Positions 10,407 to 44,480 of a stretch of DNA of 64,000 bases are shown one piece after another. The position numbers were made by a program, and so were the translations under genes. Where the stretch lies: the NCBI RefSeq assembly GCF_006345805.1, contig NC_042997.1, positions 27,094,001 to 27,158,000 of the forward strand, read 5' to 3'. The notes beneath the pieces are model-generated. The model saw nothing but the letters and a program-made list of their open reading frames with translations, made no database searches and was not told where the DNA came from. Within the stretch, counting starts at the first letter, position 1. The number at the start of each line of letters is the position of its first letter. This DNA is from Octopus sinensis. Its lineage: Eukaryota.

Positions 10407-10984
10407 TTACCCGCCTCTGTAAGAAATGCTTAATCAGATAAATAAACAATGTGTTAATATTATAAAAATTGTCATTCTGTTAGATATTATGTTGATGATT
10501 CCTGGCTATTGGCGAAGATTGGTGATTACATTAACTTTTGATCAGATAATACTTTATGTAAGTTAGTATGAAAACGGTAAATTTCTTTTAGAATATTTAG
10601 ACCAGTTTTAATGGAGCAGTACTTAAATTGACTGTATTAGGTGTCAAAAGCAATTAATGTTGATATTTAAAATACAGAACAGCAAGGGAAAGAAATAAAT
10701 ATTTTAAAACATTTAATGCAACGATTTATTGCAAATTAGCTTTATTTCATCAATATTTTGTAATTATAAAAATATCCTAAACTTAGTGGAAACAGAATTA
10801 GAGAGATTATGATGTTAATAAGCATCTCTAATAACATAATATAAAATGACCGAGAGGTCAAACTGTAGTTTTTGAGTACCTAAGATTTTCTAATAAATAT
10901 TATCACCTACATTCACTATACACGTGTATATCGATCAATCTCCATTTGTCTATCTATCTATCTATTCATAGATAGATAAAAATA

Positions 10985-11009
10985 AAGTTACATAGATAGA
11001 TAGATATAC

Positions 11010-11070
<61 letters not shown>

Positions 11071-11075
11071 CAGAT
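10985..11075. repeat. (GATA)n microsatellite
   Basis: Direct reading. Confidence 0.95.
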
Positions 11076-11261
11076 AGGTGAGCTTGTGTATCTTTGCATC
11101 TGTGTTTCCCTCCAGTCATCTATTGATAACCAGTGCAGGTTTGTTTATGTCCCCGAACTTAGCAGTTCCCCAAGAAGGTACAATTAGTCGATGCAGTAAG
11201 TTAGAAATAGCATTGAATAAGTCATAGGTGTGTGTTAAAACGTGTGGGGGAAGCGTGGCCT

Positions 11262-19728: not shown

Positions 19729-19789
19729 GTGTGTGTATATATATACATATATACATACATATATATATATATACGTATAGATAAAGATA

Positions 19790-19796
19790 GATAGAG

Positions 19797-19870
<74 letters not shown>
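19790..19870. repeat. (GATA)n/(GATT)n compound microsatellite
   Basis: Direct reading. Confidence 0.9.
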
Positions 19871-19871
<1 letters not shown>

Positions 19872-20189
19872 CTGGCAGACACATAGGGAGACAGACATGT
19901 AAGCAGACAGACACAGAGGCAGATATGAGACAGATAGTCAAACTGAAAGCTAAATAGATAGATAGATTAATCGATAGATAAATAGATAGGTAGATAGATA
20001 GATCGATAGAGAGAGAGGGTGAGGTGAGCCTGAGAGAGCGAGCGAGAGATATAGATATGGATATGGAGATACTTGTCTCTGTAAATGTGTATATTTGTGC
20101 GTAGCGTACAATATGAACGAAACACAAACAGCACCAATCAAAAGAGAGATGTTGTCATCATCGTACTCACCATGAAACGCATCAATATT

Positions 20190-20849: not shown

Positions 20850-20855
<6 letters not shown>
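20690..20855 (+). mobile_element. Dispersed element with hammerhead-like motif, ending in (TA)n
   Basis: CTTT-CTGTTGA-A-GAGC-GTAG-GCTC-GAAAC-GTA-AAAT at 20705-20740, then the shared tail GAGCGTTAAGCTAATACATCTG...GTAAATTCC and (TA)n. Confidence 0.65.
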
Positions 20856-20911
<56 letters not shown>

Positions 20912-20929
20912 TATATGTAAGTATATATA

Positions 20930-21200
<271 letters not shown>

Positions 21201-21915
21201 TACATACATACATATACATGTATATACATATATGTATATTTGTATGTATACTTATATATATACATACATACACCCCCCCACACACACACACAAGTATTTA
21301 TCTATCTATTTATATTGATATATATACCCAGGTATGTATATATATAGAGGAAGACATGGTTGTGCGTATGTCTAACGGAAACTGACACATCTTTCAATTA
21401 AGCTCTCATATACATATAAACACACCACTATTCACATACTAACATCTGACTTTGGCGCTCCTGTACACACACCGGTACACGGGCACTAACATCCCTATAG
21501 AATTCTTCCTCTCATTTTTTCTTTCTCTGTCCCTCACTCTATTACAGGCTAATATGTCAACCCTTAAAGTATATACTCACAGACATATATATTTATGTAT
21601 GTATGGATGTATGTATGTATGTATGTATGTATGTATGTATGTACGTATGTATGTATGTATGTATGTGTACAAAAAGACGGAGGGAGATAGCGAAAGTCAA
21701 ATAATGTGAGAAGTATGCAAAAATACATATTCAACATTTTATAGATATATTGATTTAATTTTATTGTTTTCAAAGTTCTTTGAGATTTGAAAGCATATTT
21801 TGCCATGAAAACATGGATTACTACTTCCGAACAGCTTTATTTTTATGAATATCAGATAAATGTATAAAGCATGAAATCATCATATCTTGATGTACAGATT
21901 GACGCATAAAAATGA

Positions 21916-25941: not shown

Positions 25942-25944
<3 letters not shown>

Positions 25945-25999
<55 letters not shown>

Positions 26000-26041
26000 G
26001 GATCGATCGATCGATAGATCGATAGATAGATATATATAGAG

Positions 26042-26080
<39 letters not shown>

Positions 26081-26095
26081 CAGATAGATATAGAT
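25945..26095. repeat. (GATA)n microsatellite
   Basis: Direct reading. Confidence 0.95.
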
Positions 26096-26720
26096 ATATT
26101 CATATATGTATGTATGAGTGTATGTATATGTGTATATATGTATGTATGTATGTATGTGTGTATGTATGTATATATGTGTGTACGTGTGTGTATGTATAAA
26201 TTGTAATAGGCTATCCGTTATATTACGTTGACAGTTACTTCGTATACTCATCGGAATTTGCTTTATTCAGACTCTTTTAGTACGGCTTGAATTAATGCTT
26301 CACAATGTTTCTACTATAAATAAATAGATGTATAAATATATGCGCGTGTATGTGTGTGCAAATGTATGTGTGTGTGTTTGTTCGTGCACGCGTGTATAAG
26401 TGAATATATGACCGGGTAGACAAGGAATGAGCGATAAATATATTGGGAACTGATCAAAAGAGCAACCATGCAGATAGACAGATCGAAAGATGGATAGGTA
26501 CGCATGCGCGAATATATGCCTTGGCATATCTCTTCGATTCATCGACGTGTCTATCCATCTTCATATATTTATGTTGAATCCGTTTAAACAAACGAGTTAT
26601 ATGGCGAAATGGCCAAAAGAGTAATTAGATAGATAGATGGATACATAGATAGATGGAGAGATAGATAGTTAGATAGATAGATGGATATATAGATAGATAG
26701 ATATATAGATAGATAGATAT

Positions 26721-28633
26721 GTTTCTTTATTAGCCACACAGGGCTGCACACAGATAGAACAAATTACAAGGTAGAGCTTTTCTTTTGAAGGTAAAAAAAA
26801 ATAAAAAATTAAAATTAAAATTTAAAAAAAGGGGGGTCGATCAAAAGGGATCGTAAAAGGAGAGAAAGAGGACAAAAAAGGGGGGGTTAAAAAAAGGGGG
26901 GAGGAAAAAAAATTGATCAATAGGGATCGTTATCACAGAAATGTCAATATGAAGTGTAAAGGGGAGGACAGGTGAGGTTTACCCGTGGAAAGAAAAGCCT
27001 ACGGAAAAGACCACGGTAACCTCGCAAATAAGCAACTCTCTGTATTAATTTTTACGGTTCATAGAATCATAGTCAAGGTGGCTTCGTCATTCATACGTGC
27101 CATCCTTGCTACATTCACCCATCTTTTATTAAAACATTCACTAGACAAAACTTGCCTCTCTACTCTCACTTTTTTCTTCAAGTGATACTTGAAGAAGTTG
27201 ATGAGAGATTGACCAGAGAGGAAAGTGTTTGTCTCTAATCCTTTCAGGCGCGTCCACCAGATACATTCTTTCGCCATAGCCACAAGTATGATAAAAATAG
27301 CCCTTCCTTCCCGTTTGAAGGAAGGAGGCGTGACGATATTAACGATAGACTCGGCTGATAAACCGACACGTCCCACACGTGACAGCAGTCGTTCGACATA
27401 AGTCCACAGGTGGGAAATTGCCGGACACTGCACGAGTGCGTGCAGAACGGTTTCGTCGCTCTGACCGCATCTCGGGCAGGTCGGCCCCGTGTTTCTCGAG
27501 CCGTGTCTGTAGAGCTTATCCCGAACGGGTAGCGCTTCTCTGTAGCACTGCCAGGCCAGGGATCTCTGGAAGTTGTCCATGGGCCCTGGCCCGAAGTCGT
27601 CCCGAACAGGCGGGTCAGATATTCCACGTCGACGTCCAGGTTCGCCTCGAGCTCGTCGTCGTACCTCTCCCCTCCACTAATCCCCTATAGAATGCTTTGG
27701 TTGTGTTGAAGTCACTCAAGGTCGACCCGGGACGGCAGAGTTGCTTGAGAGCAACGCGACACTCGCGGTGCCATTCGCCCTTCCTCGGCCTCTTTTTGAT
27801 CCACGACTGTAGTTCGGTCATGGAGACGAGTTGCGGGAATGCGTGCCTCACAAACGGCAACCACACCTGTTCACCGTCGTCTACATAGAGCCGGAGATGT
27901 CGCAGTCTCAGCGCGTGTCTGCGCATCATCAACCACGGCATGCCCAGCCCTCCTTTTAACGGGTGTTGACAGCAAATGGATCGCCTGACCATCGGGACGC
28001 ATCCTTTCCACAAGAAGCGGAAGAGGATGCGTTCTAGTTTGGTGATGGTAGGGTCGGGACAAGGTACGACGGTCAGGCGGTAGTAGATGATGTACGCGTT
28101 CACCACCTCCGCCCGACCTTTTAGGGACAGTTTCCTCTCGGCACATTGCTGGGCGAGAGTGACCACCCTACTCGTTATCTCGTTCCAGTTCTTCTCCATT
28201 TGGAGGTCCAGACCGAACCAGACCCCGAGCAACTCAAAGGGCCGTCGCCGCGTCCACGACGGGTCCACGACGGAGGTACTGGTGGACGGCATGGGCTTGC
28301 TTCTCCAGGTGCCGAGCCGCAAGCCCACTGATTTTCCCGGTTGATTTTTGCTCCTGTCACCGCTTCGTAGTCTTTCAGTGTCTCGCCGACCCGCTCGATG
28401 TGCTCGTGGCTTGACACTATGATGGTGACGTCGTCCGCGTATGCAGACACGCTCGTCCCGCATCCCAATACTCGCGGGATGCCCTTTAGAGTCGCCAGCT
28501 TCCGCAGTAGTGGATCAAGAGTCAATACGTATAGAAGCGCCAAGAGGGGGCATCCCTGACGGACCGAACGTGCAATGTCGAAAGGTCTCGATAGATGTTC
28601 ATTTACGCAAATTTCCGAACGGATGCCTCTGTA
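26721..28633 (-). mobile_element. 5'-truncated Tx1/L1-clade non-LTR retrotransposon: frameshifted ORF2 (RT C-half to CCHC) plus 3' UTR
   Basis: YRGIRSEICVNEHLSRPFDIARSVRQGCP (28633-~28547), ALLYVLTLDPLLRKL and SVSAYADDVTII (ORF 28175-28543), GRAEVVNAY...HPLKGGLGMP (ORF 27615-28463), CPRCGQSDETVLHALVQCP (ORF 27059-27580). The 3' UTR ends AATAAAGAAAC and runs into (TATC)n. Confidence 0.9.
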
Positions 28634-31600
28634 ATTAGTTGCTGTTCAATTTTTAGTTTATTTGTTCTATTTTTAGTTGCTGTTCTATTTTTAGTTTATT
28701 TGTTCTATTTTTAGTTGCTGTTCTATTTTTAGTTTATTTGTTCTATTTTTAGTTGCTGTTCTATTTTTAGTTTATTTGTCCTATTTTTAGTTGCTGTTCT
28801 ATTTTTAGTTTATTTGTTCTATTTTTAGTTTATTTGTTCTATTTTTAGTTGCTGTTCTATTTTTAGTTTATTTGTTCTATTTTTAGTTGCTGCTCGATTT
28901 TTAGTTGCTGTTCTACTTTTAGTTTATTTGTTCTATTTTTAGTTGTTGTTCTATTTTTAGTTTATTTGTTCTATTTTTAGTTGCTGTTCTATTTTTAGTT
29001 GCTTTTCTATTTTTAGTTGCTGTTCTATTTTTACTTTATTTGTTCAATTTTTAGTTGCTGTTCTATTTTTAGTTTATTTGTTCTATTTTTAGTTTATTTG
29101 TCATATTTTTAGTTGCTGTTCTATTTTTAGTTTATTTGTTCTATTTTTAGTTGCTGCTCTATTTTTAGTTGCTGTTCTACTTTTAGTTTATTTGTTCTAT
29201 TTTTAGTTGCTGTTCTCTTTTTAGTTTATTTGTTCTATTTTTAGTTGCTGTTCTATTTTTAGTTGCTGTTCTATTTTTAGTTGCTGTTCTATTTTTACTT
29301 TATTTGTTCTATTTTTAGTTGCTGTTCTATTTTTAGTTTATTTGTTCTATTTTTAGTTTATTTGTCCTATTTTTAGTTGCTGTTCTATTTTTAGTTTATT
29401 TGTTCTATTTTTAGTTGCTGTTCTATTTTTAGTTATTTTTTTCTATTTTTAGTTGCTGTTCCATTTTTAGTTGCTGTTCTATTTTTAGGTTATTGTTCTA
29501 TTTTTAGTTGCTGTCTCTTTTAAGTTTATTTGTCCTATTTTTAGTTGCTGTTCTATTTTTAGTTTATTTGTTCTATTTTTAGTTGCTGTTCTATTTTTAG
29601 TTTATTTGTTCTATTTTTAGTTGCTGTTCTAATTTTAGTTTATTTGTCCTATTTTTAGTTGCTGTTTTATTTTTAGTTTATTTGTTCTAATGTTAGTTGT
29701 TGTCCTATTTTTAGTTTATTTGTCCTATTTTTACTTGCTGTTCTATTTTTAGTTTATTTGTTCTATTTTTAGTTGCTGTTCTATTTTTAGTTTATTTGTT
29801 CTATTTTTACTTGCTGTTCAATTTTTAGTATATTTGTCCTATTTTTAGTTGCTGTTCTATTTTTAGTTAATTTGTTCTATTTTTAGTTGCTGTTCTATTT
29901 TCAGTTTATTTGTCCTATTTTTGGTTGCTGTTCTATTTTTAGTTGCTGTTCTAATTTAAGTTTATTTGTTCTATTTTTAGTTGCTGTTCTATTTTTAGTT
30001 TATTTGTCCTATTTTTAGTTGCTGTTCTATTTTTAGTTTATTTGTTCTATTTTTAGTTGCTGTTCTATTTTTAGTTGCAGTTCTATTTTTAGTTTCTTTG
30101 ATCTATTTTTAGTTGCTGTTATATTTTTAGTTGCTGTTCTATTTTTAGTTTATTTGTTCTAGTTTTAGTTGTGTCTATTTTTTAGTTTATTTGTTCTATT
30201 TTTAGTTGCTGCTGTTATTTGTAGTTTATTTGTTCTTTTTTAGTTGCTGTTCTATTTTAGTTTATTTGTTGTATTTTTAGTTTCTGTTCTATTTTTAGTT
30301 GCTGTTCTATTTTTAGTTGGCTGTTCTATTTTTAGTTTATTTGTTCTATATTTTAGTTGCTGTTCTATTTTTAGTTGCTGTCTATTTTTAGTCTATTTTC
30401 CTATTTTAGTTGCTGTGTTCTATTTTTAGGTTGCTGTCTATTTTTAGTTGTTGTTCTATTTTAGTTTATTTGTTCTATTTTACCTTGCTGTTCTATTTTT
30501 AGTTGCTGTTCTATTTTTAGTTTATTTGTTCTATTTTTAGTTGCTGTTCTATTTTTAGTTTATTTGTTCTATTTTTAGTTTATTTGTCCTATTTTTAGTT
30601 GCTGTTCTATTTTTAGTTTATTTGTTCTATTTTTAGTTGCTGTTCTATTTTTAGTTATTTTTCTTCTATTTTTAGTTGCTGTTCCATTTTTAGTTGCTGT
30701 TCTATTTTTAGTTTATTTGTTCTATTTTTAGTTGCTGTTCTATTTTAAGTTTATTTGTCCTATTTTTAGTTGCTGTTCTATTTTTAGTTTATTTGTTCTA
30801 TTTTTAGTTGCTGTTCTATTTTTAGTTTATTTGTTCTATTTTTAGTTGCTGTTCTATTTTAGTTTATTGTCCTATTTTTAGTTGCTGTTTTATTTTTAGT
30901 TTATTGTTCTAATTTTAGTTGTTGTTATATTTTAGTTTATTTGTCCTATTTTTACTTGCTGTTCTTTTTTAGTTTATTTGTTCTATTTTTAGTTGCTGTT
31001 CTATTTTTAGTTTATTTGTTCTATTTTTACTTGCTGTTCAATTTTTAGTATATTTGTCCTATTTTTAGTTGTGTTCTATTTTTAGTTAATTTGTTCTATT
31101 TTTAGTTGCTGTTCTATTTTCAGTTTATTTGTCCTATTTTTGGTGTGTTCTATTTTTAGTTGCTGTTCTAATTTAAGTTTATTTGTTCTATTTTTAGTTG
31201 CTGTTCTATTTTAGTTTATTTGTGTCTATTTTTAGTTGCTGTTCTATTTTTAGTTTATGTGTTCTATTTTTAGTTGCTGTTCTATTTTTAGTTGCAGTTC
31301 TATTTTTAGTTTCTTTGATCTATTTTTAGTTGCTGTTATATTTTTAGTTGCTGTTCTATTTTTAGTTTATTTGTTCTATTTTTAGTTGCTGTTCTATTTT
31401 TAGTTTATTTGTTCTATTTTTAGTTGCTGTTCTTTTTGTAGTTATTTGTTCTATTTTTGTTGCTGTTCTATTTTTAGTTTATTTGTTGTATTTTTAGTTT
31501 CTGTTCTATTTTAGTTGCTGTTCTATTTTTAGTTGGTGTTCTATTTTTAGTTTATTTGTTTATTTTAGTTGCTGTTCTATTTTTAGTTGCTGTCCTATTT

Positions 31601-34600
31601 TTAGTCTATTTGTCTATTTTTAGTGATGTTCTATTTTTAGTTGCTGTCCTATTTTTAGTTGTTGTTCTTTTTTAGTTTATTTGTTCTATTTTTACTTGCT
31701 GTTCTATTTTTAGTTGCTGTTCTATTTTAGTTTATTTGTTCTATTTTAGTTGCTGTTCTATTTTTAGTTTATTTGTTCTATTTTTAGTTGCTGTTCTATT
31801 TTTACTTGCTGTTCTATTTTTAGTGCTGTTCTATTTTAGTTGCTGTTCTATTTGTAGTTATTGTTCTATTTTTAGTTACTGTTCTATTTTTAGTTTTATG
31901 TTGTTCTATTTTTAGTTGCTGTTCTATTTTTAGTTATTTCTTCTATTTTTAGTTCGTTCTATTTTAGTTGCTGTCTATTTTTTAGTTTATTTGTTTATTT
32001 TTAGTTGCTGTTCTATTTTTAGTTTATTTGTTCTATTTTTACTTGCTGTTCAATTTTAGTTATTTGTCCTATTTTTAGTTGCTGTCTATTTTTGTAATTT
32101 GTTTTATTTTAGTTGCGTTCTATTTTAGTTTATTTGTCCTATTTTTGGTTGCTGTTCTATTTTTAGTTGCTGTTCTAATTTAAGTTTATTTGTTCTATTT
32201 TTAGTTGCTGTTCTATTTTTAGTTTATTTGTCCTATTTTTAGTTGCTGTTCTATTTTTAGTTTATTTGTTCTATTTTTAGTTGCTGTTCTATTTTTAGTT
32301 GCAGTTCTATTTTTAGTTTCTTTGATCTATTTTTAGTTGCTGTTATATTTTTAGTTGCTGTTCTATTTTTAGTTTATTTGTTCTATTTTTAGTTGCTGTT
32401 CTATTTTTTAGTTTATTTGTTCTATTTTTAGTTGCTGTTCTATTTGTAGTTTATTTGTTCTATTTTTAGTTGCTGTTCTATTTTTAGTTTATTTGTTGTA
32501 TTTTTAGTTTCTGTTCTATTTTTAGTTGCTGTTCTATTTTTAGTTGGTGTTCTATTTTTAGTTTATTTGTTCTATTTTTAGTTGCTGTTCTATTTTTAGT
32601 TGCTGTCCTATTTTTAGTCTATTTGTCCTATTTTTAGTTGCTGTTCTATTTTTAGTTGCTGTCCTATTTTTAGTTGTTGTTCTATTTTTAGTTTATTTGT
32701 TCTATTTTTACTTGCTGTTCTATTTTTAGTTGCTGTTCTATTTTTAGTTTATTTGTTCTATTTTTAGTTGCTGTTCTATTTTTAGTTTATTTGTTCTATT
32801 TTTAGTTGCTGTTCTATTTTTACTTGCTGTTCTATTTTTAGTTGCTGTTCTATTTTAGTTGCTGTTCTATTTGTAGTTTATTTGTTCTATTTTTAGTTAC
32901 TGTTCTATTTTTAGTTTATTTGTTCTATTTTAGTTGCTGTTCTATTTTGTTTATTTTTCTTCTATTTTTAGTTGCTGTTCCATTTTTAGTTGCTGTTTTC
33001 TTTTTTTTAGTTTATTTGTTCTATTTTTTAGTTGCTGTTCTATTTTAAGTTTATTTGTCCTATTTTTAGTTGCTGTTCTATTTTTAGTTTATTTGTTCTA
33101 TTTTTAGTTGCTGTTCTATTTTTAGTTTATTTGTTCTATTTTTAGTTGCTGTTCTATTTTTAGTTTATTTGTCCTATTTTTAGTTGCTGTTTTATTTTTA
33201 GTTTATTTGTTCTAATTTTAGTTGTTGTTCTATTTTTAGTTTATTTGTCCTATTTTTACTTGCTGTTCTATTTTTAGTTTATTTGTTCTATTTTTAGTTG
33301 CTGTTCTATTTTTAGTTTATTTGTTCTATTTTTACTTGCTGTTCAATTTTTAGTATATTTGTCCTATTTTTAGTTGCTGTTCTATTTTTAGTTAATTTGT
33401 TCTATTTTTAGTTGCTGTTCTATTTTCAGTTATTTGTCCTATTTTTGGTTCTGTTCTATTTTAGTTGCTGTTCTAATTTAAGTTTATTTGTTCTATTTTT
33501 AGTTGCTGTCTATTTTTTAGTTTATTTGTCCTATTTTTAGTTGCTGTTCTATTTTTAGTTATTTGTTCTATTTTTAGTTGCTGTTCTATTTTTAGTTGCA
33601 GTTCTCTTTTAGTTTCTTCTGATCTATTTTTAGTTGCTGTTATATTTTTAGTTGCTGTTCTATTTTTAGTTTATTTGTTCTATTTTTAGTTGCTGTTCTA
33701 TTTTTTAGTTTATTTGTTCTATTTTTAGTTGCTGTTCTATTTGTAGTTTATTTGTTCTATTTTTAGTTGCTGTTCTATTTTTAGTTTATTTGTTGTATTT
33801 TTAGTTTCTGTTCTATTTTTTAGTTGCTGTTCTATTTTTAGTTGGTGTTCTATTTTTAGTTTATTTGTTCTATTTTGTTGCTGTTCTATTTTTAGTTGCC
33901 TGTCCTATTTTTAGTCTATTTGTCCTATTTTTAGTTGCTGTTCTATTTTTAGTTGCTGTCCTATTTTTAGTTGTTGTTCTATTTTTAGTTTATTTGTTCT
34001 ATTTTTACTTGCTGTTCTATTTTTAGTTGCTGTTCTATTTTTTAGTTGCTGTTCTATTTTTTGTTGCTGTTCTATTTTTAGTTTATTTGTTCTATTTTTA
34101 GTTGCTGTTCTATTTTTTTACTTGCTGTTCTATTTTTAGTTGCTGTTCTATTTTAGTTGCTGTTCTATTTGTAGTTTATTTGTTCTATTTTTAGTTACTG
34201 TTCTATTTTTAGTTTATTTGTTCTATTTTTAGATGCTGTTCTATATTTCGTTGCTGTTCTATTTTTAGTTTATTTGTTCTATTTTTAGTTGCTGTTCTAT
34301 TTTTAGTTGCTGTCCTATTTTTAGTCTATTTGTCCTATTTTTAGTTGCTGTTCTATTTTTAGTTACTGTCCTATATTTAGTTGTTGTTCTATTTTTAGTT
34401 TATTTGTTCTATTTTTACTTGCTGTTCTATTTTTAGTTGCTGTTCTATTTTTAGTTTATTTGTTCTATTTTTAGTTGCTGTTCTATTTTTAGTTTATTTG
34501 TTCTATTTTTAGTTGCTGTTCTATTTTTACTTGCTGTTCTATTTTTAGTTGCTGTTCTATTTTAGTTGCTGTTCTATTTGTAGTTTATTTGTTCTATTTT

Positions 34601-37600
34601 TAGTTACTGTTCTATTTTTAGTTTATTTGTTCTATTTTTAGTTGCTGTTCTATATTTCGTTGCTGTTCTATTTTTAGTTTATTTGTTCTATTTTTAGTTG
34701 CTGTTCTATTTTTAGTTGCTGTCCTATTTTTAGTCTATTTGTCCTATTTTTAGTTGCTGTTCTATTTTTAGTTACTGTCCTATATTTAGTTGTTGTTCTA
34801 TTTTTAGTTTATTTGTTCTATTTTTACTTGCTGTTCTACTTTTAGTTGCTGTTATATTTTTAGTTTATTTGTTCTATTTTTAGTTGCTGTTCTATTTTTA
34901 CTTGCTGTTCTATTTTTAGTTGCAGTTCTATTTTTAGTTTAATTGTTCTATTTTTAGTTGCTGTTCTATTTTTAGTTTATTTGTTCTATTTTTAGTTGCT
35001 GTTCTATTTTTAGTTTATTTGTTCTATTTTTAGTTTCTGTTCAATTTTTACTTGCTGTTCTATTTTTAGTTTATTTGTTCTATTTTTAATTGCAGTTCTA
35101 TTTTTAGTTGCTGTTCTATTTTTAGATTATTTGTTCTATTTTTAGTTGCTGTTCTATTTTTAGTTGCTGTTCTATAGTTAGTTTATATGTTCTATTATTT
35201 GTTGCTGTTTTATTTTTTAGTTTATTTGTTCTATTTTTAGTTTCTGTTCAATTTTTACTTGCTGTTCTATTTTTAATTGCTGTTCTATTTTTAGTTTATT
35301 TGTTCTATTTTTACTTGCTGTTCTATTTGTAGTTGCTGTTCTATTTTTAGTTTATTTGTTCTATTTTTAGTTGCTGTTCTATTTTTAGTTGCTTTTCTAT
35401 TTTTAGTTTATTTGTTCTATTTTTAGAATCTATAAGTAACTAAATAAATAAATAAATAAATAGAATCTATAAATAGAATCTATTAATAGAATATATAAAT
35501 AGAATCTAGAAATAGAATCTAGAAATAGAATCTAGAAATAGAATCTAGAAATAGAATCTATAAATAAATAAATAAATACATAAATAAATAGTATCTATAA
35601 ATAAATCTATAAATAGAATCTATAAATATAATCTTTAAATAGAATCTATAAATAGTATCTATAAATAGAATCTATAAATAAATAAATAAATAAATAAATA
35701 GAATCTTTAAATAGTATCGATAAATAGAATCTATAAATAGAATCTATAAATAGAATCTATAAATAGAATCTATAAATAGTATCTATAAATAGAATCTATA
35801 AATAAATAAATAAATAAATAGAATCTATAAATAGAATTTATAAATAAATAAATAAAGAGTATCTATAAATAGATTCTATAAATAGAACCCATAAACAGAA
35901 TCTATAAATAGAATCTATAAATAGAATCAATAAATAGAATCTATAAAGAGAATCTATAAGTAGTATCTATAAATAGAATCTATAAATAGAATCTATAAAT
36001 AAATAAATAAATAAATAGAATCTATAAATAGAATCTATAAATAGAATCTATAAATAGAATCTATAAATAGTAGCTATAAATAGAAGCTATAAATAGAAGC
36101 TATAAATAGAAGCTATAAAAATAGAACACCAGCTAAAAATAGGACAAATAACTAAAAAAAGAACAGCAACTAAAATTAGGACAAATAAACTAAATTAGAA
36201 GAAATAAACTAAAAATAGAACAGCAACTAAGAATAGGACAAATAAACTAACAATAGAACAAATAAAGTAAAAATAGGACAAATAAACTTAAAATAGGAGA
36301 AATTAGCTAAAAATTAGGACAAATAAACTAAAAATAGGACAAATAAACTAAAAATAGAACAGCAACTAAAAATAGTACAAATAAACTAAAAATAGAAAAG
36401 CAACTAAAAATAGAACAAATAATCTAAAAATAGAACAGCAACAAAAATAGAACAGCAACTAAGAATAGAACAAATAAACTAAAAATAGAACAGCAACTAA
36501 AAATAGAACAAATAAACTAAAAATAGAACAGCAACAAAAATAGAACAAATAAACTAAAAATAGAACAGCAACTAAAATTAGGACAAATAAACTTAAAATA
36601 GAACAAATAAATTAAAAATAGGACAAATAAACTAAAAATAGGACAAATAACTTAAAAATTGGACAAATAAACTAAAAATAGAGCAGCAACTAAAAATAGA
36701 ACAAATAAACTAAAAATAGAACAGCAACTAAAAATAGAACGAATAAACTAAAAATAGAACAGCAACTAAAAATAGGACAAATAAACTAAAAATAGAACAA
36801 ATAAACTAAAAATAGGGCAAATAAACAAAAATAGAACAAATAAACTAAAAATAGGGCAAATAAACTAAAGATAGAACAAATAAACTAAAAATAGGATAAA
36901 TAAACTAAAAATAGAACAAATAAACTAAAAAAAGGAAACAGCAACTAAAAATAGAACAGCAAGTAAATATAGAACAAATAAACAAATAATAGAACAGCAA
37001 CTAAAACTAGAACAAATAAACTGAAAATAGAACAGCAACTAAAAATAGAACAAATAAACTAAAAATAGAACAGCAACTAAAAATAGAACCAATAGACTAA
37101 AAATAAAACAGCAACTAAAAATAGAACAGCAACTAAAAATAGAACAAATAAACTAAAAATAGAACAAATAAACAAAAAGTAGGACAAAAAACTAAAAATA
37201 GGATAAATAAACTAAAAATAGGACAAATAAACTAAATAATAGTACAAATATTTTTAGTTTATTTGTTCTATTTTTAGTTGCTGTTCTATTTTTAGTTTAC
37301 TCGTCCTATTTTTAGTTGCTGTTCTATTTTTAGTTGCTGTTATATTTTTAGTTTATTTGACCTATTTTTAGTTGCTGTTCTATTTTATTTTATTTGTTCT
37401 ATTTTTAGTTGCTTTTCTATTTTTAGTTGCTGTTCTATTTTTAGTTTAATTGTCCTATTTTTAGTTGCTGTTCTATCTTTAGTTGCTGTTCTATTTTTAG
37501 TTAATTTGTCCTATATTTAGTTGCTTTTGTATTTTTAGTTTATTTGTCCTATTTTTAGTTGCTGTTATATTTTTAGTTTATTTGTCCTATTTTTAGTTGC

Positions 37601-40600
37601 TGTTCTATTAGTTTATTTGTTCTATTTTAGTTTATTTGTCGTATTTTTAGTTGCTGTTCTATTTTTAGTTGCTGTTCTCCTTTTAGTTTATTTGTCCTAT
37701 TTTTAGTTGCTGTTCTATTTCTAGTTGCTGTTCTATTTTTAGTTGCTGTTCTATTTTTAGTTACAGTTCTATTTTTAGTTTATTTGTTCTATTTTTAGTT
37801 GCTGGTCTATTTTTAGTTGCTGTTCTATATTTAGTTTATTTGTTCTATTATTATTTGCTGTTCTATTTTTAGTTGTTGTTCTATTTTTAGTTTATTTGTT
37901 CTATTTTAGTTTCTGTTCAATTTTTACTCACTGTTCTATTTTTAGTTGCTGTTCTATATTTAGTTTATTTCTCCTATTATTAGTTGCTGTTCTATTTTAG
38001 TTTATTTGTTCTATTTTTAGTTTCTGTTCAATTTTTACTTGCTGTTCTATTTTTCGTTGCTGTTCTATTTTTAGTTTATTTGTTCTATTTTTAGTTGCTG
38101 TTCTATTTTTAGTTGCTGTTCTATTTTTAGTTTACTCGTCCTATTTTTAGTTGCTGTTCTATTTTTAGTTGCTGTTATATTTTTAGTTTATTTGACCTAT
38201 TTTTAGTTGCTTTTCTATTTTATTTTATTTGTTCTATTTTTAGTTGCTTTTCTATTTTTAGTTGCTGTTCTATTTTTTAGTTTAATTGTCCTATTTTTAG
38301 TTGCTGTTCTATCTTTAGTTGCTGTTCTATTTTTAGTTAATTTGTCCTATATTTAGTTGCTTTTGTATTTTTAGTTTATTTGTCCTATTTTTAGTTGCTG
38401 TTCAATTTTTAGTTTATTTGTCCTATTTTAGTTGCTGTTCTATTTTTAGTTTATTTGTCGTATTTTTAGTTGCTGTTCTATTTTTAGTTGCTGTTCTCCT
38501 TTTAGTTTATTTGTCCTATTTTTAGTTGCTGTTCTATTTCTAGTTGCTGTTCTATTTTTAGTTGCTGTTCTATTTTTAGTTACAGTTCTATTTTTAGTTT
38601 ATTTGTTCTATTTTTAGTTGCTGGTCTATTTTTAGTTGCTGTTCTATATTTAGTTTATTTGTTCTATTATTATTGCTGTTCTATTTTTAGTTTTGTTGTT
38701 CTATTTTTAGTTTATTTTTTCTATTTTTAGTTTCTGTTCAATTTTTACTCACTGTTCTATTTTTAGTTGCTGTTCTATATTTAGTTTATTTCTCCTATTA
38801 TTAGTTGCTGTTCTATTTTTAGTTTATTTGTTCTATTTTTAGTTTCTGTTCAATTTTTACTTGCTGTTCTATTTTTCGTTGCTGTTCTATTTTTAGTTTA
38901 TTTGTTCTATTTTTAGTTGCTGTTCTATTTTTAGTTGCTGTTCTATTTTTAGTTTACTCGTCCTATTTTTAGTTGCTGTTCTATTTTTAGTTGCTGTTAT
39001 ATTTTTAGTTTATTTGACCTATTTTTAGTTGCTGTTCTATTTTATTTTATTTGTTCTATTTTTAGTTGCTTTTCTATTTTTAGTTGCTGTTCTATTTTTA
39101 GTTTAATTGTCCTATTTTTAGTTGCTGTTCTATCTTTAGTTGCTGTTCTATTTTTAGTTAATTTGTCCTATATTTAGTTGCTTTTGTATTTTTAGTTTAT
39201 TTGTCCTATTTTTAGTTGCTGTTCAATTTTTAGTTTATTTGTCCTATTTTAGTTGCTGTTCTATTTTTAGTTTATTTGTCGTATTTTTAGTTGCTGTTCT
39301 ATTTTTAGTTGCTGTTCTCCTTTTAGTTTATTTGTCCTATTTTTAGTTGCTGTTCTATTTCTAGTTGCTGTTCTATTTTTAGTTGCTGTTCTATTTTTAG
39401 TTACAGTTCTATTTTTAGTTTATTTGTTCTATTTTTAGTTGCTGGTCTATTTTTAGTTGCTGTTCTATATTTAGTTTATTTGTTCTATTATTATTTGCTG
39501 TTCTATTTTTAGTTGTTGTTCTATTTTTAGTTTATTTGTTCTATTTTTAGTTTCTGTTCAATTTTTACTCACTGTTCTATTTTTAGTTGCTGTTCTATAT
39601 TTAGTTTTATTTCTCCTATTATTAGTTGCTGTTCTATTTTTAGTTTATTTGTTCTATTTTAGTTTCTGTTCAATTTTTACTTGCTGTTCTATTTTTCGTT
39701 GCTGTGTCTATTTTTAGTTTATTTGTTCTATTTTTAGTTGCTGTTCTATTTTTAGTTGCTGTTCTATTTTTAGTTTATTTGTTCTATTTTTAGATGCTGT
39801 TCTATTTTTAGTTTATTTGTCCTATTTTTTGTTGCTGTTCTATTTTTACTTGCTGTTCTATTTTTAGTTTATTTGTTCTATTTTTAGTTGCTGTTCTATT
39901 TTTAGTTGCTGTTCTCCTTTTAGTTTATTTGTCCTATTTTTAGTTGCTGTTCTATTTCTAGTTGCTGTTCTATTTTTAGTTGCTGTTCTATTTTTAGTTA
40001 CAGTTCTATTTTTAGTTTATTTGTTCTATTTTTAGTTGCTGGTCTATTTTTAGTTGCTGTTCTATATTTAGTTTATTTGTTCTATTATTATTTGCTGTTC
40101 TATTTTTAGTTGTTGTTCTATTTTTAGTTTATTTGTTCTATTTTTAGTTTCTGTTCAATTTTTACTCACTGTTCTATTTTTAGTTGCTGTTCTATATTTA
40201 GTTTATTTCTCCTATTATTAGTTGCTGTTCTATTTTTAGTTTATTTGTTCTATTTTTAGTTTCTGTTCAATTTTTACTTGCTGTTCTATTTTTCGTTGCT
40301 GTTCTATTTTTAGTTTATTTGTTCTATTTTTAGTTGCTGTTCTATTTTTAGTTGCTGTTCTATTTTTAGTTTATTTGTTCTATTTTTAGATGCTGTTCTA
40401 TTTTTAGTTTATTTGTCCTATTTTTTGTTGCTGTTCTATTTTTACTTGCTGTTCTATTTTTAGTTTATTTGTTCTATTTTTAGTTGCTGTTCTATTTTTA
40501 GGTGCTTTTCTATTTTTAGTTTATTTGTTCTATTTTTAGAATCTATAAGTAAGTAAATAAATAAATAAATAAATAAATAGAATCTATAAATAGAATCTAT

Positions 40601-41036
40601 AAATAGATTCTATAAATAGAATCTATAAATAGAATCTATAAATAGAATCTATAAATAGAATCTATGAATAAATAAATAAATAAATAAATAAATAGTATCT
40701 ATAAATAGAATCTATAAAAAGAATCTATAAATAGAATCTATAAATAGAATCTATAAATAGTATCTATAAATAGAATCTTTAAATAGTATCAATAAATAGA
40801 ATCTATAAATAAATAAATAAATAAATAAATAAATAGAATCTATAAATAGAATCTATAAATAGAATCTATAAATAGAATCTATAAATAGAATCTATAAATA
40901 GAATCTATAATAGAATCTATAAATAAATAAATAAAAAATAAATAATAAATAGAATCTATAAATAGAATCTATAAATAGAATCTATAAATAGAATCTATAA
41001 ATAGAATCTATAAATAGAATCTATAAATAGAATCTA

Positions 41037-41067
<31 letters not shown>

Positions 41068-41701
41068 AGAGTATCTATAAATAGAATCTATAAATAGAAT
41101 CTATAAATAGAATCTATAAATAGGATCTATAAATAAATAAATAAATAGAATCTATAAAGAGAATCTATAAATAGAAGCTATAAATAGGAGCTATAAATAG
41201 AAGCTATAAAAATAGAACAGCAGCTAAAAATAGGACAAATAAACTAAAAATAGAACAGCAACTAAAATTAGGACAAATAAACTAAAAATAGAATAAATAA
41301 ACTAAAAATAGAACAGCAACTAAGAATAGGACAAATAAACTAACAATAGAACAAATAAAATAAAATTAGGACAAATAAAATAAAAATAGTAGAAATAAGC
41401 TATTTTTAGTTTATTTGTCCTATTTTTAGTTGCTGTTCTATTTTTAGTTTATTTGCCCTATTTTTAGTTTGTGTTCTATTTTTAGTTTATTTGTCGTATT
41501 TTTAGGTGCTGTTCTATTTTTAGTTTTTTTGTCCTATTTTTAGTTGCTGTTCTATTTTTAGTTGCTGTTCTATTTTTAGTTGCTGTTCTATTTTTAGTTG
41601 CTGTTCTATTTTTAGTTTATTTGTTCTATTTTTAGTTGCTGTTCTATTTTTAGTTGCTGTTCTATTTTTAGTTTATTTGTCCTATTTTTAGTTGCTGTTC
41701 T
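28634..41701. repeat. 13-kb satellite of interspersed 18-bp (TTTTTAGTTGCTGTTCTA) and 20-bp (TTTTTAGTTTATTTGTTCTA) monomers with internal inversions and 13-bp sub-arrays
   Basis: T-rich 28634-35426; 13-mer (ATAGAATCTATAA)n plus (TAAA)n 35427-36117; A-rich reverse complement 36118-37250; T-rich 37251-40539; 13-mer 40540-41209; A-rich 41210-41401; T-rich 41402-41701. Confidence 0.97.
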
Positions 41702-41712
41702 GATAGATAGAT

Positions 41713-41784
<72 letters not shown>

Positions 41785-41944
41785 GTTTCTTTATTGGCCA
41801 CATAGGGCTGCACACAGATGGGACAATTTACAAGGTAGAGCTTTTCTTTTGGTGCATGAAAAAAACAAAAACAAAAGAAAAAATAGTTGGTGTAGGTTTT
41901 CGATCAAAAGGGATCGTAAAAGGGAAAAAGAAGAACAAAAAAAT

Positions 41945-42035
<91 letters not shown>

Positions 42036-42044
42036 GGATGGATG

Positions 42045-42140
<96 letters not shown>
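41702..42140. repeat. (GATA)n microsatellite interrupted by a Tx1 3'-end fragment
   Basis: GATA runs at 41702-41783 and 41945-42140. Confidence 0.95.
41785..41943 (-). mobile_element. 3'-terminal fragment (~160 bp) of the Tx1-like LINE
   Basis: GTTTCTTTATTGGCCACATAGGGCTGCACACAGATGGGACAATTTACAAGGTAGAGCTTTTCTTTT matches 26721-26790. Flanked by (GATA)n on both sides. Confidence 0.9.
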
Positions 42141-42670
42141 CACAGACAGACAGATAGATTTGAATGTACTCGTATGTATATCTCTTCAAATCATAAACAT
42201 GAAAATCCGTTCCCACAGACATAATTGTGAATCCATTTGAACAAATAAACATGCAAGTACGATGAGGAAGTGACTTTCAACAAGCGAATGTAAAGAGATG
42301 ACACAAAACGTTCTCACCATTTCTATCTTCCGTCTGAAAAGATGTTATCTCCGTAAAATTTTATGTTAATGATAAAGAGACTGAATATGTATCATTTTTC
42401 ATTTTATCATTTCTTCACAGTGTACTTATGGTGATAAGTTAGTCAGTATTTCTGAACCTGGGAAAGAGTCTTCAACCACAGCTCAATGGACGACCAAAGC
42501 CTCGCGAGCGAATTTGGTAGTGTGTGTGTGTGTGTGTGCGTGTACGTGTGAGTGTGTGTGTGTGCTCTTTCCATTCAACCTTTGAACTATATATATATAT
42601 ATATATACAGAGAGGGAGAGAGAGAGAGAGAGAATGAGAGAGAAAGGCAAATAAATTGATAGATAGATAA

Positions 42671-43020
42671 GTTTCTTTATTGGCCACACAGGGCTGCACA
42701 CAGATGGGACAAGTTACAAGGTAGAGCTTTTCTTTTCGGGGAGAAAAAAAAAAGGTGGCGTAGGTTTTCGATCAAAAGGAATCGTAAAAGGGAAAAAAAC
42801 GAAAAGAAACAAAAAAGAAAAAAAGAAAAGGAAAAAAGAAAAAAAAGGAAAAAGGGAAAAAAAGAAAAGAAAAATGAAAAGAGAAGAAAAAAGAGGAAAA
42901 AAGGGGGAGAGGAAAAAAAACGATCAATAGGGATCGTGTATCACAGTGTCATGATGTATGGTGTAAAGGGGAAAGCAAGTAAGGTTTATCTGTGGTAAGA
43001 AAAGCCTACGAAAATCATGG
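42671..43020 (-). mobile_element. 3'-terminal fragment (~350 bp) of the Tx1-like LINE
   Basis: Matches 26721-27015, including AGAAAAGCCTACG. Preceded by GATAGATAGATAA. Confidence 0.9.
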
Positions 43021-43355
43021 GACTGCGGCTATGCTGGGGCACCGCTTTGAAGTATTTAGTCGAATATATAGACGCCAGTAATTATCTGTTCTATCGTCAC
43101 TTTTTGCCGAAGCGCTAAGTTACAGGAGCGTAAGCCAATAGCGATGTTCAAGCGGTTTTGAGGTAAATACACATACAAAGACACATACACACATAAATAT
43201 GTATACGACAGGTTTTTTTCAGTTTTCACAACGAAACCTACTGGCCAGGCTTCGATCGTGTGGAAGCTCTAGTAGATGACACTTGCACTATGTGCGATTC
43301 AGTGAAACTGAACTGGGAACCATGTGGTTGGGAAGCAAGCTTTTTACCACACAGC
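43020..43355 (-). mobile_element. Degenerate SINE family B
   Basis: GACTGCGGCTATGCTGGGGCACCGC, TTTTGCCGAAGCGCTAAGTTAC and CCATGTGGTTGGGAAGCAAGC...ACCACACAGCCA. Confidence 0.7.
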
Positions 43356-43689: not shown

Positions 43690-44480
43690 TTCTACTCTAG
43701 GCACAAGGCTCGAAATTTTGTGGGAGAGGACCAGTCGATGAGATCGACACCAGTATGCTACTGGTACTTAATTTATCGACTCGGAAAGTATAAAAGGCAA
43801 GGTCGACCTCGGCGGAATTTGAACTCATAACGTAAAGACAGACGAAATACCTATGAGCATTTCGGCCGGCGTGCAAGCGTTTCTTATTTCTTTATTGCCC
43901 AAAAGGGGCTAAACATAGAAGAGACAAACAAGGACAGACAAACGGATTAAGTCGATTACATCGACCCCAGTGCGTAACTGGTTCTTAATTTATCGACCCC
44001 GAAAGGATGAAAGGCAAAGTCGACCTCGGCGGAATTTGAACTCATAACGTAACGACAGACGAAATACCTATTTCTTTACTACCCACAAGGGGCTAAACAC
44101 AGAGGACAAACAAGGACAGACAAACGGATTAAGTCGATTACATCGACCCCAGTGCGTAACTGGTTCTTAATTTATCGACCCCGAAAGGATGAAAGGCAAA
44201 GTCGACCTCGGCGGAATTTAAACTCAGAACGTAACGGCAGACGAAATACTTATTTCTTTACTACCCACAAGGGGCTAAACACAGAGGACAAACAAGGACA
44301 GACAAACGGATTAAGTCGATTACATCGACCCCAGTGCGTAACTGGTTCTTAATTTATCGACCCCGAAGGTATGAAAAGCAAAGTCGAACTCGGCGGAATT
44401 TGAACTCAGAATGTAACGGCAGACGAAATACCGCTAAGCATTTCGCCCAGCGTGCTAACGTTTCTGCCAGCAAGCCGCCT
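43690..44480 (-). mobile_element. SINE family C cluster: a young head-to-tail trimer (182-bp period) inserted into an older copy
   Basis: GTCGATTACATCGACCCC recurs at 43951, 44133 and 44315. Only the last unit has the full head (to ~44480). An older copy with a different tail occupies 43690-43880. Confidence 0.9.

What the first reader, a model, noticed from the sequence alone, without database searches (positions are those of the whole stretch)
28634..41701. Fold-back satellite with a repeated three-part module: T-strand, palindromic 13-mer spacer, A-strand
Seen: four orientation switches of two distinct kinds. Both T-to-A switches pass through a ~680-bp 13-mer block, with essentially the same entry junction (GCTTTTCTATTTTTAGTTTATTTGTTCTATTTTTAG|AATCTATAAGTAA at 35426 and 40539) and the same first A-strand variants (AACTAAGAATAGG, AACTAACAATAG). 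Both A-to-T switches are abrupt at micro-palindromes (AAATA|TTT at 37250; AGCT at 41399-41402). The module was therefore copied as a unit and re-truncated by fold-back. Inference: growth by iterative snap-back/template-switch synthesis or breakage-fusion-bridge-like events, giving kb-scale hairpin or cruciform potential. This is unlike ordinary head-to-tail satellites.
Basis: partly seen in the sequence, partly recalled or inferred. Interest (0 to 1): 0.8.

Follow-up and report, generated by a model that had tools for sequence, protein, structure and literature searches.

The report
Octopod satellite array with inverted blocks
A 13-kb non-coding AT-rich tandem repeat in a cephalopod genome contains two related stretches that run backwards; the structure is real as described, but it shows no trace of fold-back copying, and backward-running blocks like these are already known from other satellite DNAs.

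Summary
Window 28635-41701 is one satellite array with a 38-bp unit made of an 18-mer plus a 20-mer. Its layout is T1 (6.8 kb), S1 (689-bp 13-mer block), A1 (1.1 kb, inverted), T2 (3.3 kb), S2 (667 bp), A2 (196 bp, inverted), T3 (299 bp).

The T-to-S-to-A junctions, the S blocks and the first 196 bp of A are colinear copies of each other, 88-94% identical, with private variants found nowhere else. So a cassette was duplicated as a unit.

The fold-back interpretation is not supported:
- The arms on either side of all four switches are no more alike than random satellite windows.
- The reverse complement of the 13-mer never occurs.
- The A blocks have their own monomer make-up, rich in 20-mers.
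- A1 is only 86-92% identical to anything, whereas T blocks carry 97-100% identical higher-order copies.
- The second cassette is a direct copy, not an inverted one.

All junctions lie at the CTA/TAG ends of the monomer core CTA-W5-TAG, so the micro-palindromes come with the repeat itself.

Most likely history: one old inversion, a daughter 13-mer repeat, unequal-exchange duplication, a microhomology deletion, and ongoing homogenisation of the T blocks. Inverted subarrays are documented in human, Tribolium and cichlid satellites. Read-level support could not be checked.

The parts
28635..35426 (+). T1: satellite in T-rich orientation. 363 monomers (220 18-mers TTGCTGTTCTATTTTTAG, 143 20-mers TTTATTTGTTCTATTTTTAG). 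Higher-order repeats of about 1.2-2.2 kb.
   Evidence: TRF; monomer parse; long exact repeats at offsets 1217-1228, 1297, 1707 and 2224; best same-strand partner 94-99% identical.
35427..36115 (+). S1: 13-mer sub-satellite (TAGAATCTATAAA, about 42 units) with six (ATAA)n islands. It is A-rich (AT skew +0.30) and has the same polarity as the A block.
   Evidence: Aligns with S2 at 88.7% over 673 columns.
36116..37250 (-). A1: the same satellite reverse-complemented. 59 monomers (20 a, 39 b). No higher-order repeats; the most diverged block.
   Evidence: Best match to anything is only 86-92%.
37251..40539 (+). T2: T-orientation satellite made of about four higher-order copies of about 821 bp, starting near 37264, 38099, 38921, 39743 and 40339. 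The fourth copy is 596 bp.
   Evidence: Exact repeats up to 401 bp at offsets 821/597/1657; 97-100% identity between copies.
40540..41206 (+). S2: second copy of the 13-mer block (about 38 units, six (ATAA)n islands), with the same entry and exit transitions as S1.
41207..41402 (-). A2: 10 inverted monomers. It matches the S-proximal 196 bp of A1 (36116-36309) at 93.9%, with the same monomer order (bbbbabbaba read as T strand).
41403..41701 (+). T3: terminal T-orientation block of 15 monomers, ending abruptly against a (GATA)n tract.
   Evidence: Its best match is the start of T1 (28650-28952, 92.7%).
26626..28634 (-). Left flank: 5'-truncated LINE with a reverse-transcriptase YADD region, a zf-RVT domain, a 3'UTR and a (TCTA)n tail. 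Its truncated 5' end abuts the first satellite monomer.
   Evidence: Frame translation; Pfam PF13966, E 2e-8; relatives include an Argonauta hians protein at 60% identity; sequence.
41702..41944 (-). Right flank: 240-bp fragment of the same LINE family's 3'UTR. Its (TATC)n tail abuts the last satellite monomer.
   Evidence: Pattern searches; alignment of three 3'-end copies.

Best explanation
This is a genuine non-coding satellite array in an octopod-type cephalopod genome. It carries an old inverted sub-array together with a 13-mer daughter repeat, and that cassette was later duplicated directly.

Proposed order of events (inferred):
1. A head-to-tail array of 18-mer plus 20-mer monomers existed.
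2. One segment became inverted. The breakpoints used the 2-3 bp CTA/TAG ends of the monomer core CTA-W5-TAG. The phases on all four sides fit a conservative two-break inversion.
3. A 13-mer repeat expanded by slippage at one breakpoint, possibly from the first inverted 18-mer after a 5-bp loss.
4. Unequal exchange between the same-orientation T arrays on either side duplicated the cassette (T-end, S, A).
5. The second A block was cut to 196 bp by a deletion joining the CTA of an A monomer to the CTA of a T monomer.
6. The T blocks kept homogenising by amplification of higher-order repeats. The short inverted blocks cannot exchange in register with their neighbours, so they drifted.

The array probably has no sequence-specific function. 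Its main consequence is local instability from imperfect inverted repeats.

Shown: the block map, the cassette homology, the lack of mirror arms, and the age contrast between blocks. Inferred: the order and mechanism of the events.
For: - Block map and motif polarity.
- Cassette homology: colinear alignment; A-start pair 93.9% over 196 bp and S pair 88.7% over 673 columns; 107 private shared 20-mers, mostly in colinear order from 35409 to 36266; junction 31-mer and 49-mer variants present only in the two modules; six (ATAA)n islands in each S block.
- No mirror arms at any switch.
- A blocks are compositionally distinct and only 86-92% identical to anything, whereas T1 windows reach 94-99% and T2 windows 97-100%.
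- Junction sequences all lie at CTA/TAG. T-left ends ...TAG and A1 ends CAAATA, which is the reverse complement of a 20-mer start minus 2 nt. S starts TAGAA, the reverse complement of ...TTCTA, and T2 starts TTTTTAG. These are reciprocal phases, as expected from two breaks.
- The last three 13-mers (TAGAAGCTATAAA) and the first A monomer share an AGCT variant in both modules.
Against: - No reads or second haplotype were available, so the two A-to-T junctions are each seen only once.
- The reciprocal-phase fit is weak evidence. My rough estimate of the chance probability is 0.1-0.3, and microhomology at CTA/TAG would favour these phases under several mechanisms.
- Derivation of the 13-mer from the 18-mer is not statistically supported on the consensus: 31% of composition-matched shuffles do as well, and 6% for the boundary variant.
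- The T flank left of S is no more alike between the modules (92.5%) than the T background, so the left limit of the duplicated unit is undefined.
- Array turnover could have erased the mirror arms of an ancient fold-back.
Confidence: 0.6

Rival explanations
1. One reading: the array grew by iterative fold-back. The mechanism would be snap-back priming, template switching to the complementary strand, or breakage-fusion-bridge cycles. Each switch would be a hairpin-primed inverted duplication.
For: - Every junction can be drawn as a short hairpin: TTCTA-TTTT-TAGAA at T|S, AAGCTA-TTTT-TAGTTT at A2|T3, and ACAAATA-loop-TATTTGT at A1|T2.
- There are 2-3 bp of microhomology at each junction.
- The regions fold as long hairpins: -175 kcal/mol for 600 nt (z -23) and -134 kcal/mol for 392 nt (z -26).
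Against: - The arms are not mirror copies. Mirror scores are at or below the background of random T windows.
- Private variants of the last A monomer are not mirrored in the first T monomer.
- There is no reverse-complement 13-mer anywhere, although T3 is longer than A2.
- A blocks have a different a/b monomer make-up.
- The second module is a direct copy of the first, not an inverted one.
- The hairpin energy is generic, because any A-orientation window pairs with any T-orientation window of the same satellite.
Confidence: 0.15
2. The T-S-A unit is a Foldback-type transposon (FB/Galileo/Tetris-like). Its long inverted arms would be built from short tandem repeats and its loop would be the 13-mer block, present here as two adjacent or nested copies whose arms then expanded into a satellite.
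For: - The architecture resembles foldback elements, whose terminal inverted repeats hold internal tandem repeats that can seed satellites (Tetris, PMC4079207).
- The two cassettes share junction sequences.
- Each S+A cassette is flanked by a direct TTTTTAG.
- A small foldback-like element with tandem 29-mers in its arms lies in the same window at 13138-14003.
Against: - The arms are grossly unequal: 6.8 versus 1.1 kb, and 3.3 versus 0.2 kb.
- There is no unique terminal domain. The outer ends of the array (T1 start, T3 end) have the same orientation.
- A2 ends at an internal position of A1, so at least one 'end' is a truncation.
- The flanking TTTTTAG is simply monomer sequence.
- No transposase ORF is present in the window.
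- No other copy could be found.
Confidence: 0.1
3. Assembly artefact: one or more switches come from chimeric fold-back reads or from a wrong join within a repetitive array.
For: Satellite arrays are error-prone in assembly. Each A-to-T junction is unique in the window, and reads could not be examined. T2 contains 100% identical copies over 287-401 bp, the kind of sequence in which assemblers make errors.
Against: - Chimeric fold-back reads give near-perfect palindromes. Here the arms are about 82-86% alike and not in mirror register.
- The T-to-S-to-A transition exists in two copies that differ by 6-12%, so it is not a single-read event.
- A1 has its own variant and monomer-type profile, so it is not a flipped copy of a neighbouring T stretch.
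Confidence: 0.08

Closest known systems
Macro-dyad satellite arrays of Tribolium (TmSat1/TmSat2 of T. madens; PMC13081366)
   Same: One array holds direct and inverted subarrays of the same satellite. The inversion-site sequences recur. A second, shorter satellite is embedded as a cassette with conserved transition zones. Kilobase-scale hairpin potential is predicted.
   Different: The Tribolium arrays are multi-megabase and (peri)centromeric, with thousands of near-identical inversion sites and roughly symmetric arms. Here there is one 13-kb array among LINE fragments and microsatellites, with two cassette copies 6-12% apart and very unequal arms. Genome-wide recurrence is untested.
Inversion breakpoints (strand switches) in human satellites: diverged alpha satellite, HSat3B5, beta satellite (bioRxiv 10.1101/2021.07.12.452052)
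   Same: Abrupt strand switches occur inside otherwise head-to-tail arrays. They accumulate in older, diverged layers alongside transposon insertions. That matches the diverged A blocks and the LINE-bounded edges seen here.
   Different: The monomers are different (171 bp and others) and the scale is different. No 13-mer spacer cassette is involved.
Cichlid centromeric satellite blocks of alternating orientation around inverted 'centroid' elements (PMC13652916)
   Same: Satellite blocks alternate in orientation and are separated by a non-satellite or different-repeat element that recurs.
   Different: The separators there are about 15-kb transposon-like sequences in inverted pairs. Here the two 13-mer blocks have the same orientation and are simple repeats.
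Foldback transposons with tandem-repeat arms (Drosophila FB, Galileo, Tetris; PMC4079207)
   Same: Inverted arms made of short tandem repeats around a central segment, and a known route from such arms to satellite arrays.
   Different: No terminal domains, no convincing target-site duplication, very asymmetric arms, and no evidence of mobility.

Membership tests
Satellite DNA (tandem array with higher-order repeats) | Head-to-tail monomers over kilobases | tested here: met
   About 620 monomers of 18 or 20 bp, with mean 0.9-1.8 edits from consensus.
Satellite DNA (tandem array with higher-order repeats) | Higher-order repeat units more alike than neighbouring monomers | tested here: met
   T2 has about four copies of about 821 bp at 97-100% identity. 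T1 has copies at 94-99%.
Satellite DNA (tandem array with higher-order repeats) | Many arrays or high genomic abundance | not testable with these tools
   No host genome was available. There are no copies elsewhere in the window and nothing relevant in the metagenome scans or papers.
Satellite array with inverted subarrays (macro-dyad type) | Subarrays of the same satellite in opposite orientation within one array | tested here: met
   A1 and A2 are the reverse complement of the T monomers, 87-94% identical to T windows.
Satellite array with inverted subarrays (macro-dyad type) | Conserved inversion-site or transition sequences that recur | tested here: inconclusive
   The T|S and S|A transitions are shared by the two cassettes in this array. 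The two A|T junctions differ. Recurrence in other arrays is unknown.
Satellite array with inverted subarrays (macro-dyad type) | Arms of roughly equal length (dyad symmetry) | tested here: not met
   6.8 kb against 1.1 kb, and 3.3 kb against 0.2 kb (block map).
Fold-back inversion / snap-back or breakage-fusion-bridge product | Sequence after the switch is the mirror image (reverse complement in order) of the sequence before it | tested here: not met
   Mirror scores against the background of T windows: fraction at or above the observed score is 0.95, 0.67, 0.69 and 0.13 at the A|T switches, and 0.56, 0.54, 0.14 and 0.42 across the S blocks. Monomer-type strings are not mirrored.
Fold-back inversion / snap-back or breakage-fusion-bridge product | Everything next to the switch, spacer included, reappears inverted | tested here: not met
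   The reverse complement of the 13-mer has 0 occurrences.
Fold-back inversion / snap-back or breakage-fusion-bridge product | Short microhomology or hairpin at the junction | tested here: met
   CTA/TAG ends at all junctions. The same feature is expected for end joining, so it does not discriminate.
Foldback-type transposon | Defined termini in inverted orientation, with a terminal domain | tested here: not met
   The ends are ordinary monomers, the array's outer ends have the same orientation, and A2 ends at an internal A1 position.
Foldback-type transposon | Target-site duplication | tested here: inconclusive
   TTTTTAG flanks each S+A cassette, but it is part of every monomer.
Foldback-type transposon | Dispersed copies or insertion polymorphism | not testable with these tools
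   No host genome was available.
Assembly artefact (chimeric fold-back read) | Near-perfect palindrome centred on the switch | tested here: not met
   Arms are 82-86% alike and not above background.
Assembly artefact (chimeric fold-back read) | Junction absent from independent reads | not testable with these tools
   No reads were available.

The most novel reading that the evidence does not exclude
The T / 13-mer / A cassette may be a conserved 'inversion cassette' that recurs in many arrays of this satellite across the cephalopod genome. That would be the first macro-dyad-type satellite organisation outside Tribolium, or a foldback-like mobile unit that seeds satellite arrays. It would have a structural role, or a role in promoting instability, in heterochromatin or at centromeres.
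Probability: 0.1. Interest if true: 0.55.

Novelty: new member of a known kind. Interest (0 to 1): 0.25.

Why it matters
As it stands this is a well-resolved small example of how a satellite array evolves. It shows an inversion, the birth of a daughter repeat at a breakpoint, cassette duplication, and faster homogenisation of the long same-orientation blocks than of the short inverted ones.

It matters mainly as a caution. Orientation switches and junction micro-palindromes in a satellite do not by themselves show fold-back synthesis. The mirror-arm test is the discriminating one, and here it is negative.

If the cassette proved to recur genome-wide, it would extend the Tribolium 'macro-dyad' organisation to molluscs. 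The authors of that work say it is so far known only from that genus.

Tried and rejected
- All-against-all blastn of the array timed out. I replaced it with k-mer diagonals and per-window blastn.
- Fuzzy-anchor monomer parsing missed many monomers. I replaced it with a dynamic-programming segmentation into 18-mer and 20-mer types.
- One Pfam call failed because a frame contained stops. I repeated it on clean ORFs.
- The idea that the 13-mer derives from the 18-mer by a 5-bp deletion was tested against shuffles. It is not significant for the consensus and marginal for the boundary variant, so I keep it only as a suggestion.
- The idea that the T flank left of S is part of the duplicated unit was tested. 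The flank pair is 92.5% identical, no better than background, so this stays undecided.
- The idea that the S+A cassette is a simple insertion with a target-site duplication was considered. The higher-order-repeat phase of the T1 end and the T2 start does not suggest contiguity, but the phase assignment is weak.
- The metagenome scan for the satellite found nothing. The scan for the 13-mer dimer found one unrelated contig with a chance match.
- Sequence strings were not found in any paper.
- No tRNA and no Rfam family was found in the window.
- Looking up the contig of the closest LINE protein gave no species name.
- A single 15-kb retrotransposed unit (LINE fragment + satellite + LINE) was considered and set aside as implausible in length. 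It was not tested.
Full report
**What is there**

The window is AT-rich, microsatellite-dense eukaryotic DNA. Between 28635 and 41701 lies one satellite array at about 23% GC. Its unit is a 38-bp dimer of an 18-mer 'a' (TTGCTGTTCTATTTTTAG) and a 20-mer 'b' (TTTATTTGTTCTATTTTTAG).

Motif polarity gives a clean block map (junctions read):

| Block | Coordinates | Content |
|---|---|---|
| T1 | 28635-35426 | satellite, T-rich orientation |
| S1 | 35427-36115 | 13-mer TAGAATCTATAAA plus six (ATAA)n islands |
| A1 | 36116-37250 | the satellite reverse-complemented |
| T2 | 37251-40539 | satellite, T-rich orientation |
| S2 | 40540-41206 | second 13-mer block |
| A2 | 41207-41402 | reverse-complemented satellite |
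| T3 | 41403-41701 | satellite, T-rich orientation |

None of the three motifs occurs elsewhere in the window, apart from one chance TATTTTTAG. The 13-mer never occurs in reverse complement.

**The cassette is duplicated**

Module 1 (about 35275-36309) aligns colinearly with module 2 (about 40388-41402).
- The first 196 bp of A1 and A2 are 93.9% identical, and each is the other's best match.
- S1 and S2 align at 88.7% over 673 columns.
- 107 20-mers occur exactly twice in the window, once in each module. Most are in colinear order from 35409 to 36266.
- The junction 31-mer, and the 49-mer carrying the AAG and AAC variants, occur exactly only in the two modules.
- Read as T strand from the outer end, A2 has the monomer order bbbbabbaba. 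This equals the ten S-proximal monomers of A1.

'Copied as a unit' is therefore supported for S plus the start of A. The T flank is undecided. The 200 bp left of S are 92.5% alike between the modules, which is no better than against other T windows.

**No signature of fold-back copying**

A fold-back, snap-back or breakage-fusion-bridge event makes the far side of a switch the mirror image of the near side. I aligned the reverse complement of one arm to the other arm and compared the score with the same arm against about 500 T windows.
- At A1|T2 the background matches or exceeds the mirror score in 95% (300 bp) and 67% (100 bp) of windows.
- At A2|T3 the figures are 69% and 13%.
- Across S1 and S2 they are 56%, 54%, 14% and 42%.

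Monomer-type strings are not mirrored either. Private variants of the last A monomers (GTAC/ATTATT at 37232-37250; AGCT/CTAC at 41380-41402) are absent from the first T monomers. T3 (299 bp) is longer than A2 (196 bp), yet it continues as ordinary T satellite rather than entering a reverse-complement 13-mer block.

The A blocks are also compositionally distinct: 39 b to 20 a, with b-runs of up to eight. T1 has 143 b to 220 a, T2 has 62 b to 114 a, and their b-runs never exceed two.

**Age contrast between blocks**

For 300-bp windows, the best other match is:
- 94-99% within T1 and 97-100% within T2;
- only 86-92% for A1, on either strand;
- about 90-92% between the S blocks.

T2 consists of about four higher-order copies of about 821 bp, with exact repeats up to 401 bp. 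The cassette duplication (6-12% divergence) therefore predates the current homogenisation of the T blocks. The inverted blocks behave as relics. I infer that a short inverted block cannot take part in in-register unequal exchange with its neighbours.

**The junctions**

All of them sit at the CTA or TAG end of the monomer core CTA-W5-TAG, whose two ends are reverse complements of each other.
- T|S: ...CTATTTTTAG|AATC shares TAG with the A-strand phase TAGAAC.
- A2|T3: ...AAGCTA|TTTTTAG shares CTA.
- A1|T2: ...CAAATA|TTTTTAG shares TA.

They show only that 2-3 bp of microhomology was used.

The phases are reciprocal, as a two-break inversion predicts. T-left ends at a monomer end, and A1 ends 2 nt short of the reverse complement of a monomer start. 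S/A begins TAGAA, the reverse complement of ...TTCTA, and T-right begins with the TTTTTAG that follows TTCTA. This is only modest evidence.

A2 ends at the position equivalent to 36309 of A1 (TTAGCTAAAAA there, AAGCTA|TTTTT here). This fits a deletion between two CTA triplets.

**The 13-mer**

It is A-rich (AT skew +0.30-0.32) and in phase with the A-strand 18-mer: ATAGAA-----GCTATAA against ATAGAACAGCAGCTAAAA. The last three 13-mers and the first A monomer share an AGCT variant in both modules. This suggests birth from the breakpoint-proximal monomer. However, composition-matched shuffles do as well in 31% of trials for the consensus and 6% for the boundary variant, so it remains a suggestion.

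**Hairpin potential**

As single-stranded DNA, 36951-37550 folds at -175 kcal/mol (shuffles -55 ± 5, z -23). 41207-41598 folds at -134 kcal/mol (z -26). This potential is real but generic, because any A window pairs with any T window of the same satellite. From general knowledge of palindrome behaviour, arms about 85% complementary and spacers of 0.7 kb make cruciform extrusion from duplex DNA unlikely. Hairpins on single-stranded replication intermediates are plausible.

**Context**

The left edge abuts the truncated 5' end of a minus-strand LINE. This LINE has an RT YADD motif, a zf-RVT domain (E 2e-8) and a (TCTA)n tail at 26626-26719. The right edge abuts the (TATC)n tail of a 240-bp 3'-end fragment of the same LINE family. 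A third 3' end lies at 42660-43040.

The LINE ORF's only named relative is from the octopod Argonauta hians, at 60% identity. The host is therefore probably a cephalopod, most likely an octopod; the species was not identified. There is no ORF, tRNA or Rfam family in the array.

**Comparison with known systems**

Strand switches within satellites are documented:
- Human satellites: more than 200 inversion breakpoints in HSat3B5 and beta satellite, and inversions in alpha-satellite arrays.
- Tribolium macro-dyad arrays, with conserved inversion sites and minor-satellite cassettes.
- Cichlid centromeres, with satellite blocks in alternating orientation.
- Foldback transposons with tandem-repeat arms can seed satellites. 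The defining termini and symmetry of such elements are missing here.

**Verdict**

The structure is real as far as the sequence can show, and the cassette duplication is real. The fold-back growth model is not supported. The best reading is an ordinary, though neatly resolved, satellite history: inversion, daughter repeat, unequal exchange, deletion and homogenisation.

- Confidence in the best reading: about 0.6.
- Rivals: ancient fold-back 0.15, foldback-type element 0.1, artefact 0.08.
- Interest: 0.25.
- Novelty: new member of a known kind.

Noticed in passing
26626-28634, 41702-41944, 42660-43040 (all minus strand): Three copies of the 3' end of one LINE family, each ending in a (TATC)n/(TCTA)n microsatellite tail next to GATA tracts. 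Both edges of the satellite coincide exactly with LINE junctions (a 5'-truncated end at the left, a tail at the right), and no satellite lies beyond either LINE. Why both edges are LINE-bounded is unexplained.
   Followed up: partly
13138-14003: Inverted arms of 138 nt (88% complementary) separated by 590 nt. The arms contain 29-bp tandem repeats, so this is a small foldback- or MITE-like element.
   Followed up: partly
43885-44432: Three tandem copies of a 182-bp unit at 95% identity, SINE-like in sequence. A diverged partial copy lies just upstream at about 43690-43880. There is no tRNA or Rfam match.
   Followed up: no
41403-41701 versus 28650-28952: The last block of the array (T3) has its best match at the very start of T1 (92.7% over 303 columns, against about 90-91% for other windows). 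The two ends of the array therefore resemble each other slightly more than background. The significance is unclear.
   Followed up: no
whole window, e.g. 10968-11077, 19739-20014, 20854-21214, 25942-26090, 41945-42159: There is an unusually high density of (ATAG/GATA)n, (AT)n and (TG)n microsatellites. Several GATA tracts may be LINE tails or LINE target sites.
   Followed up: no
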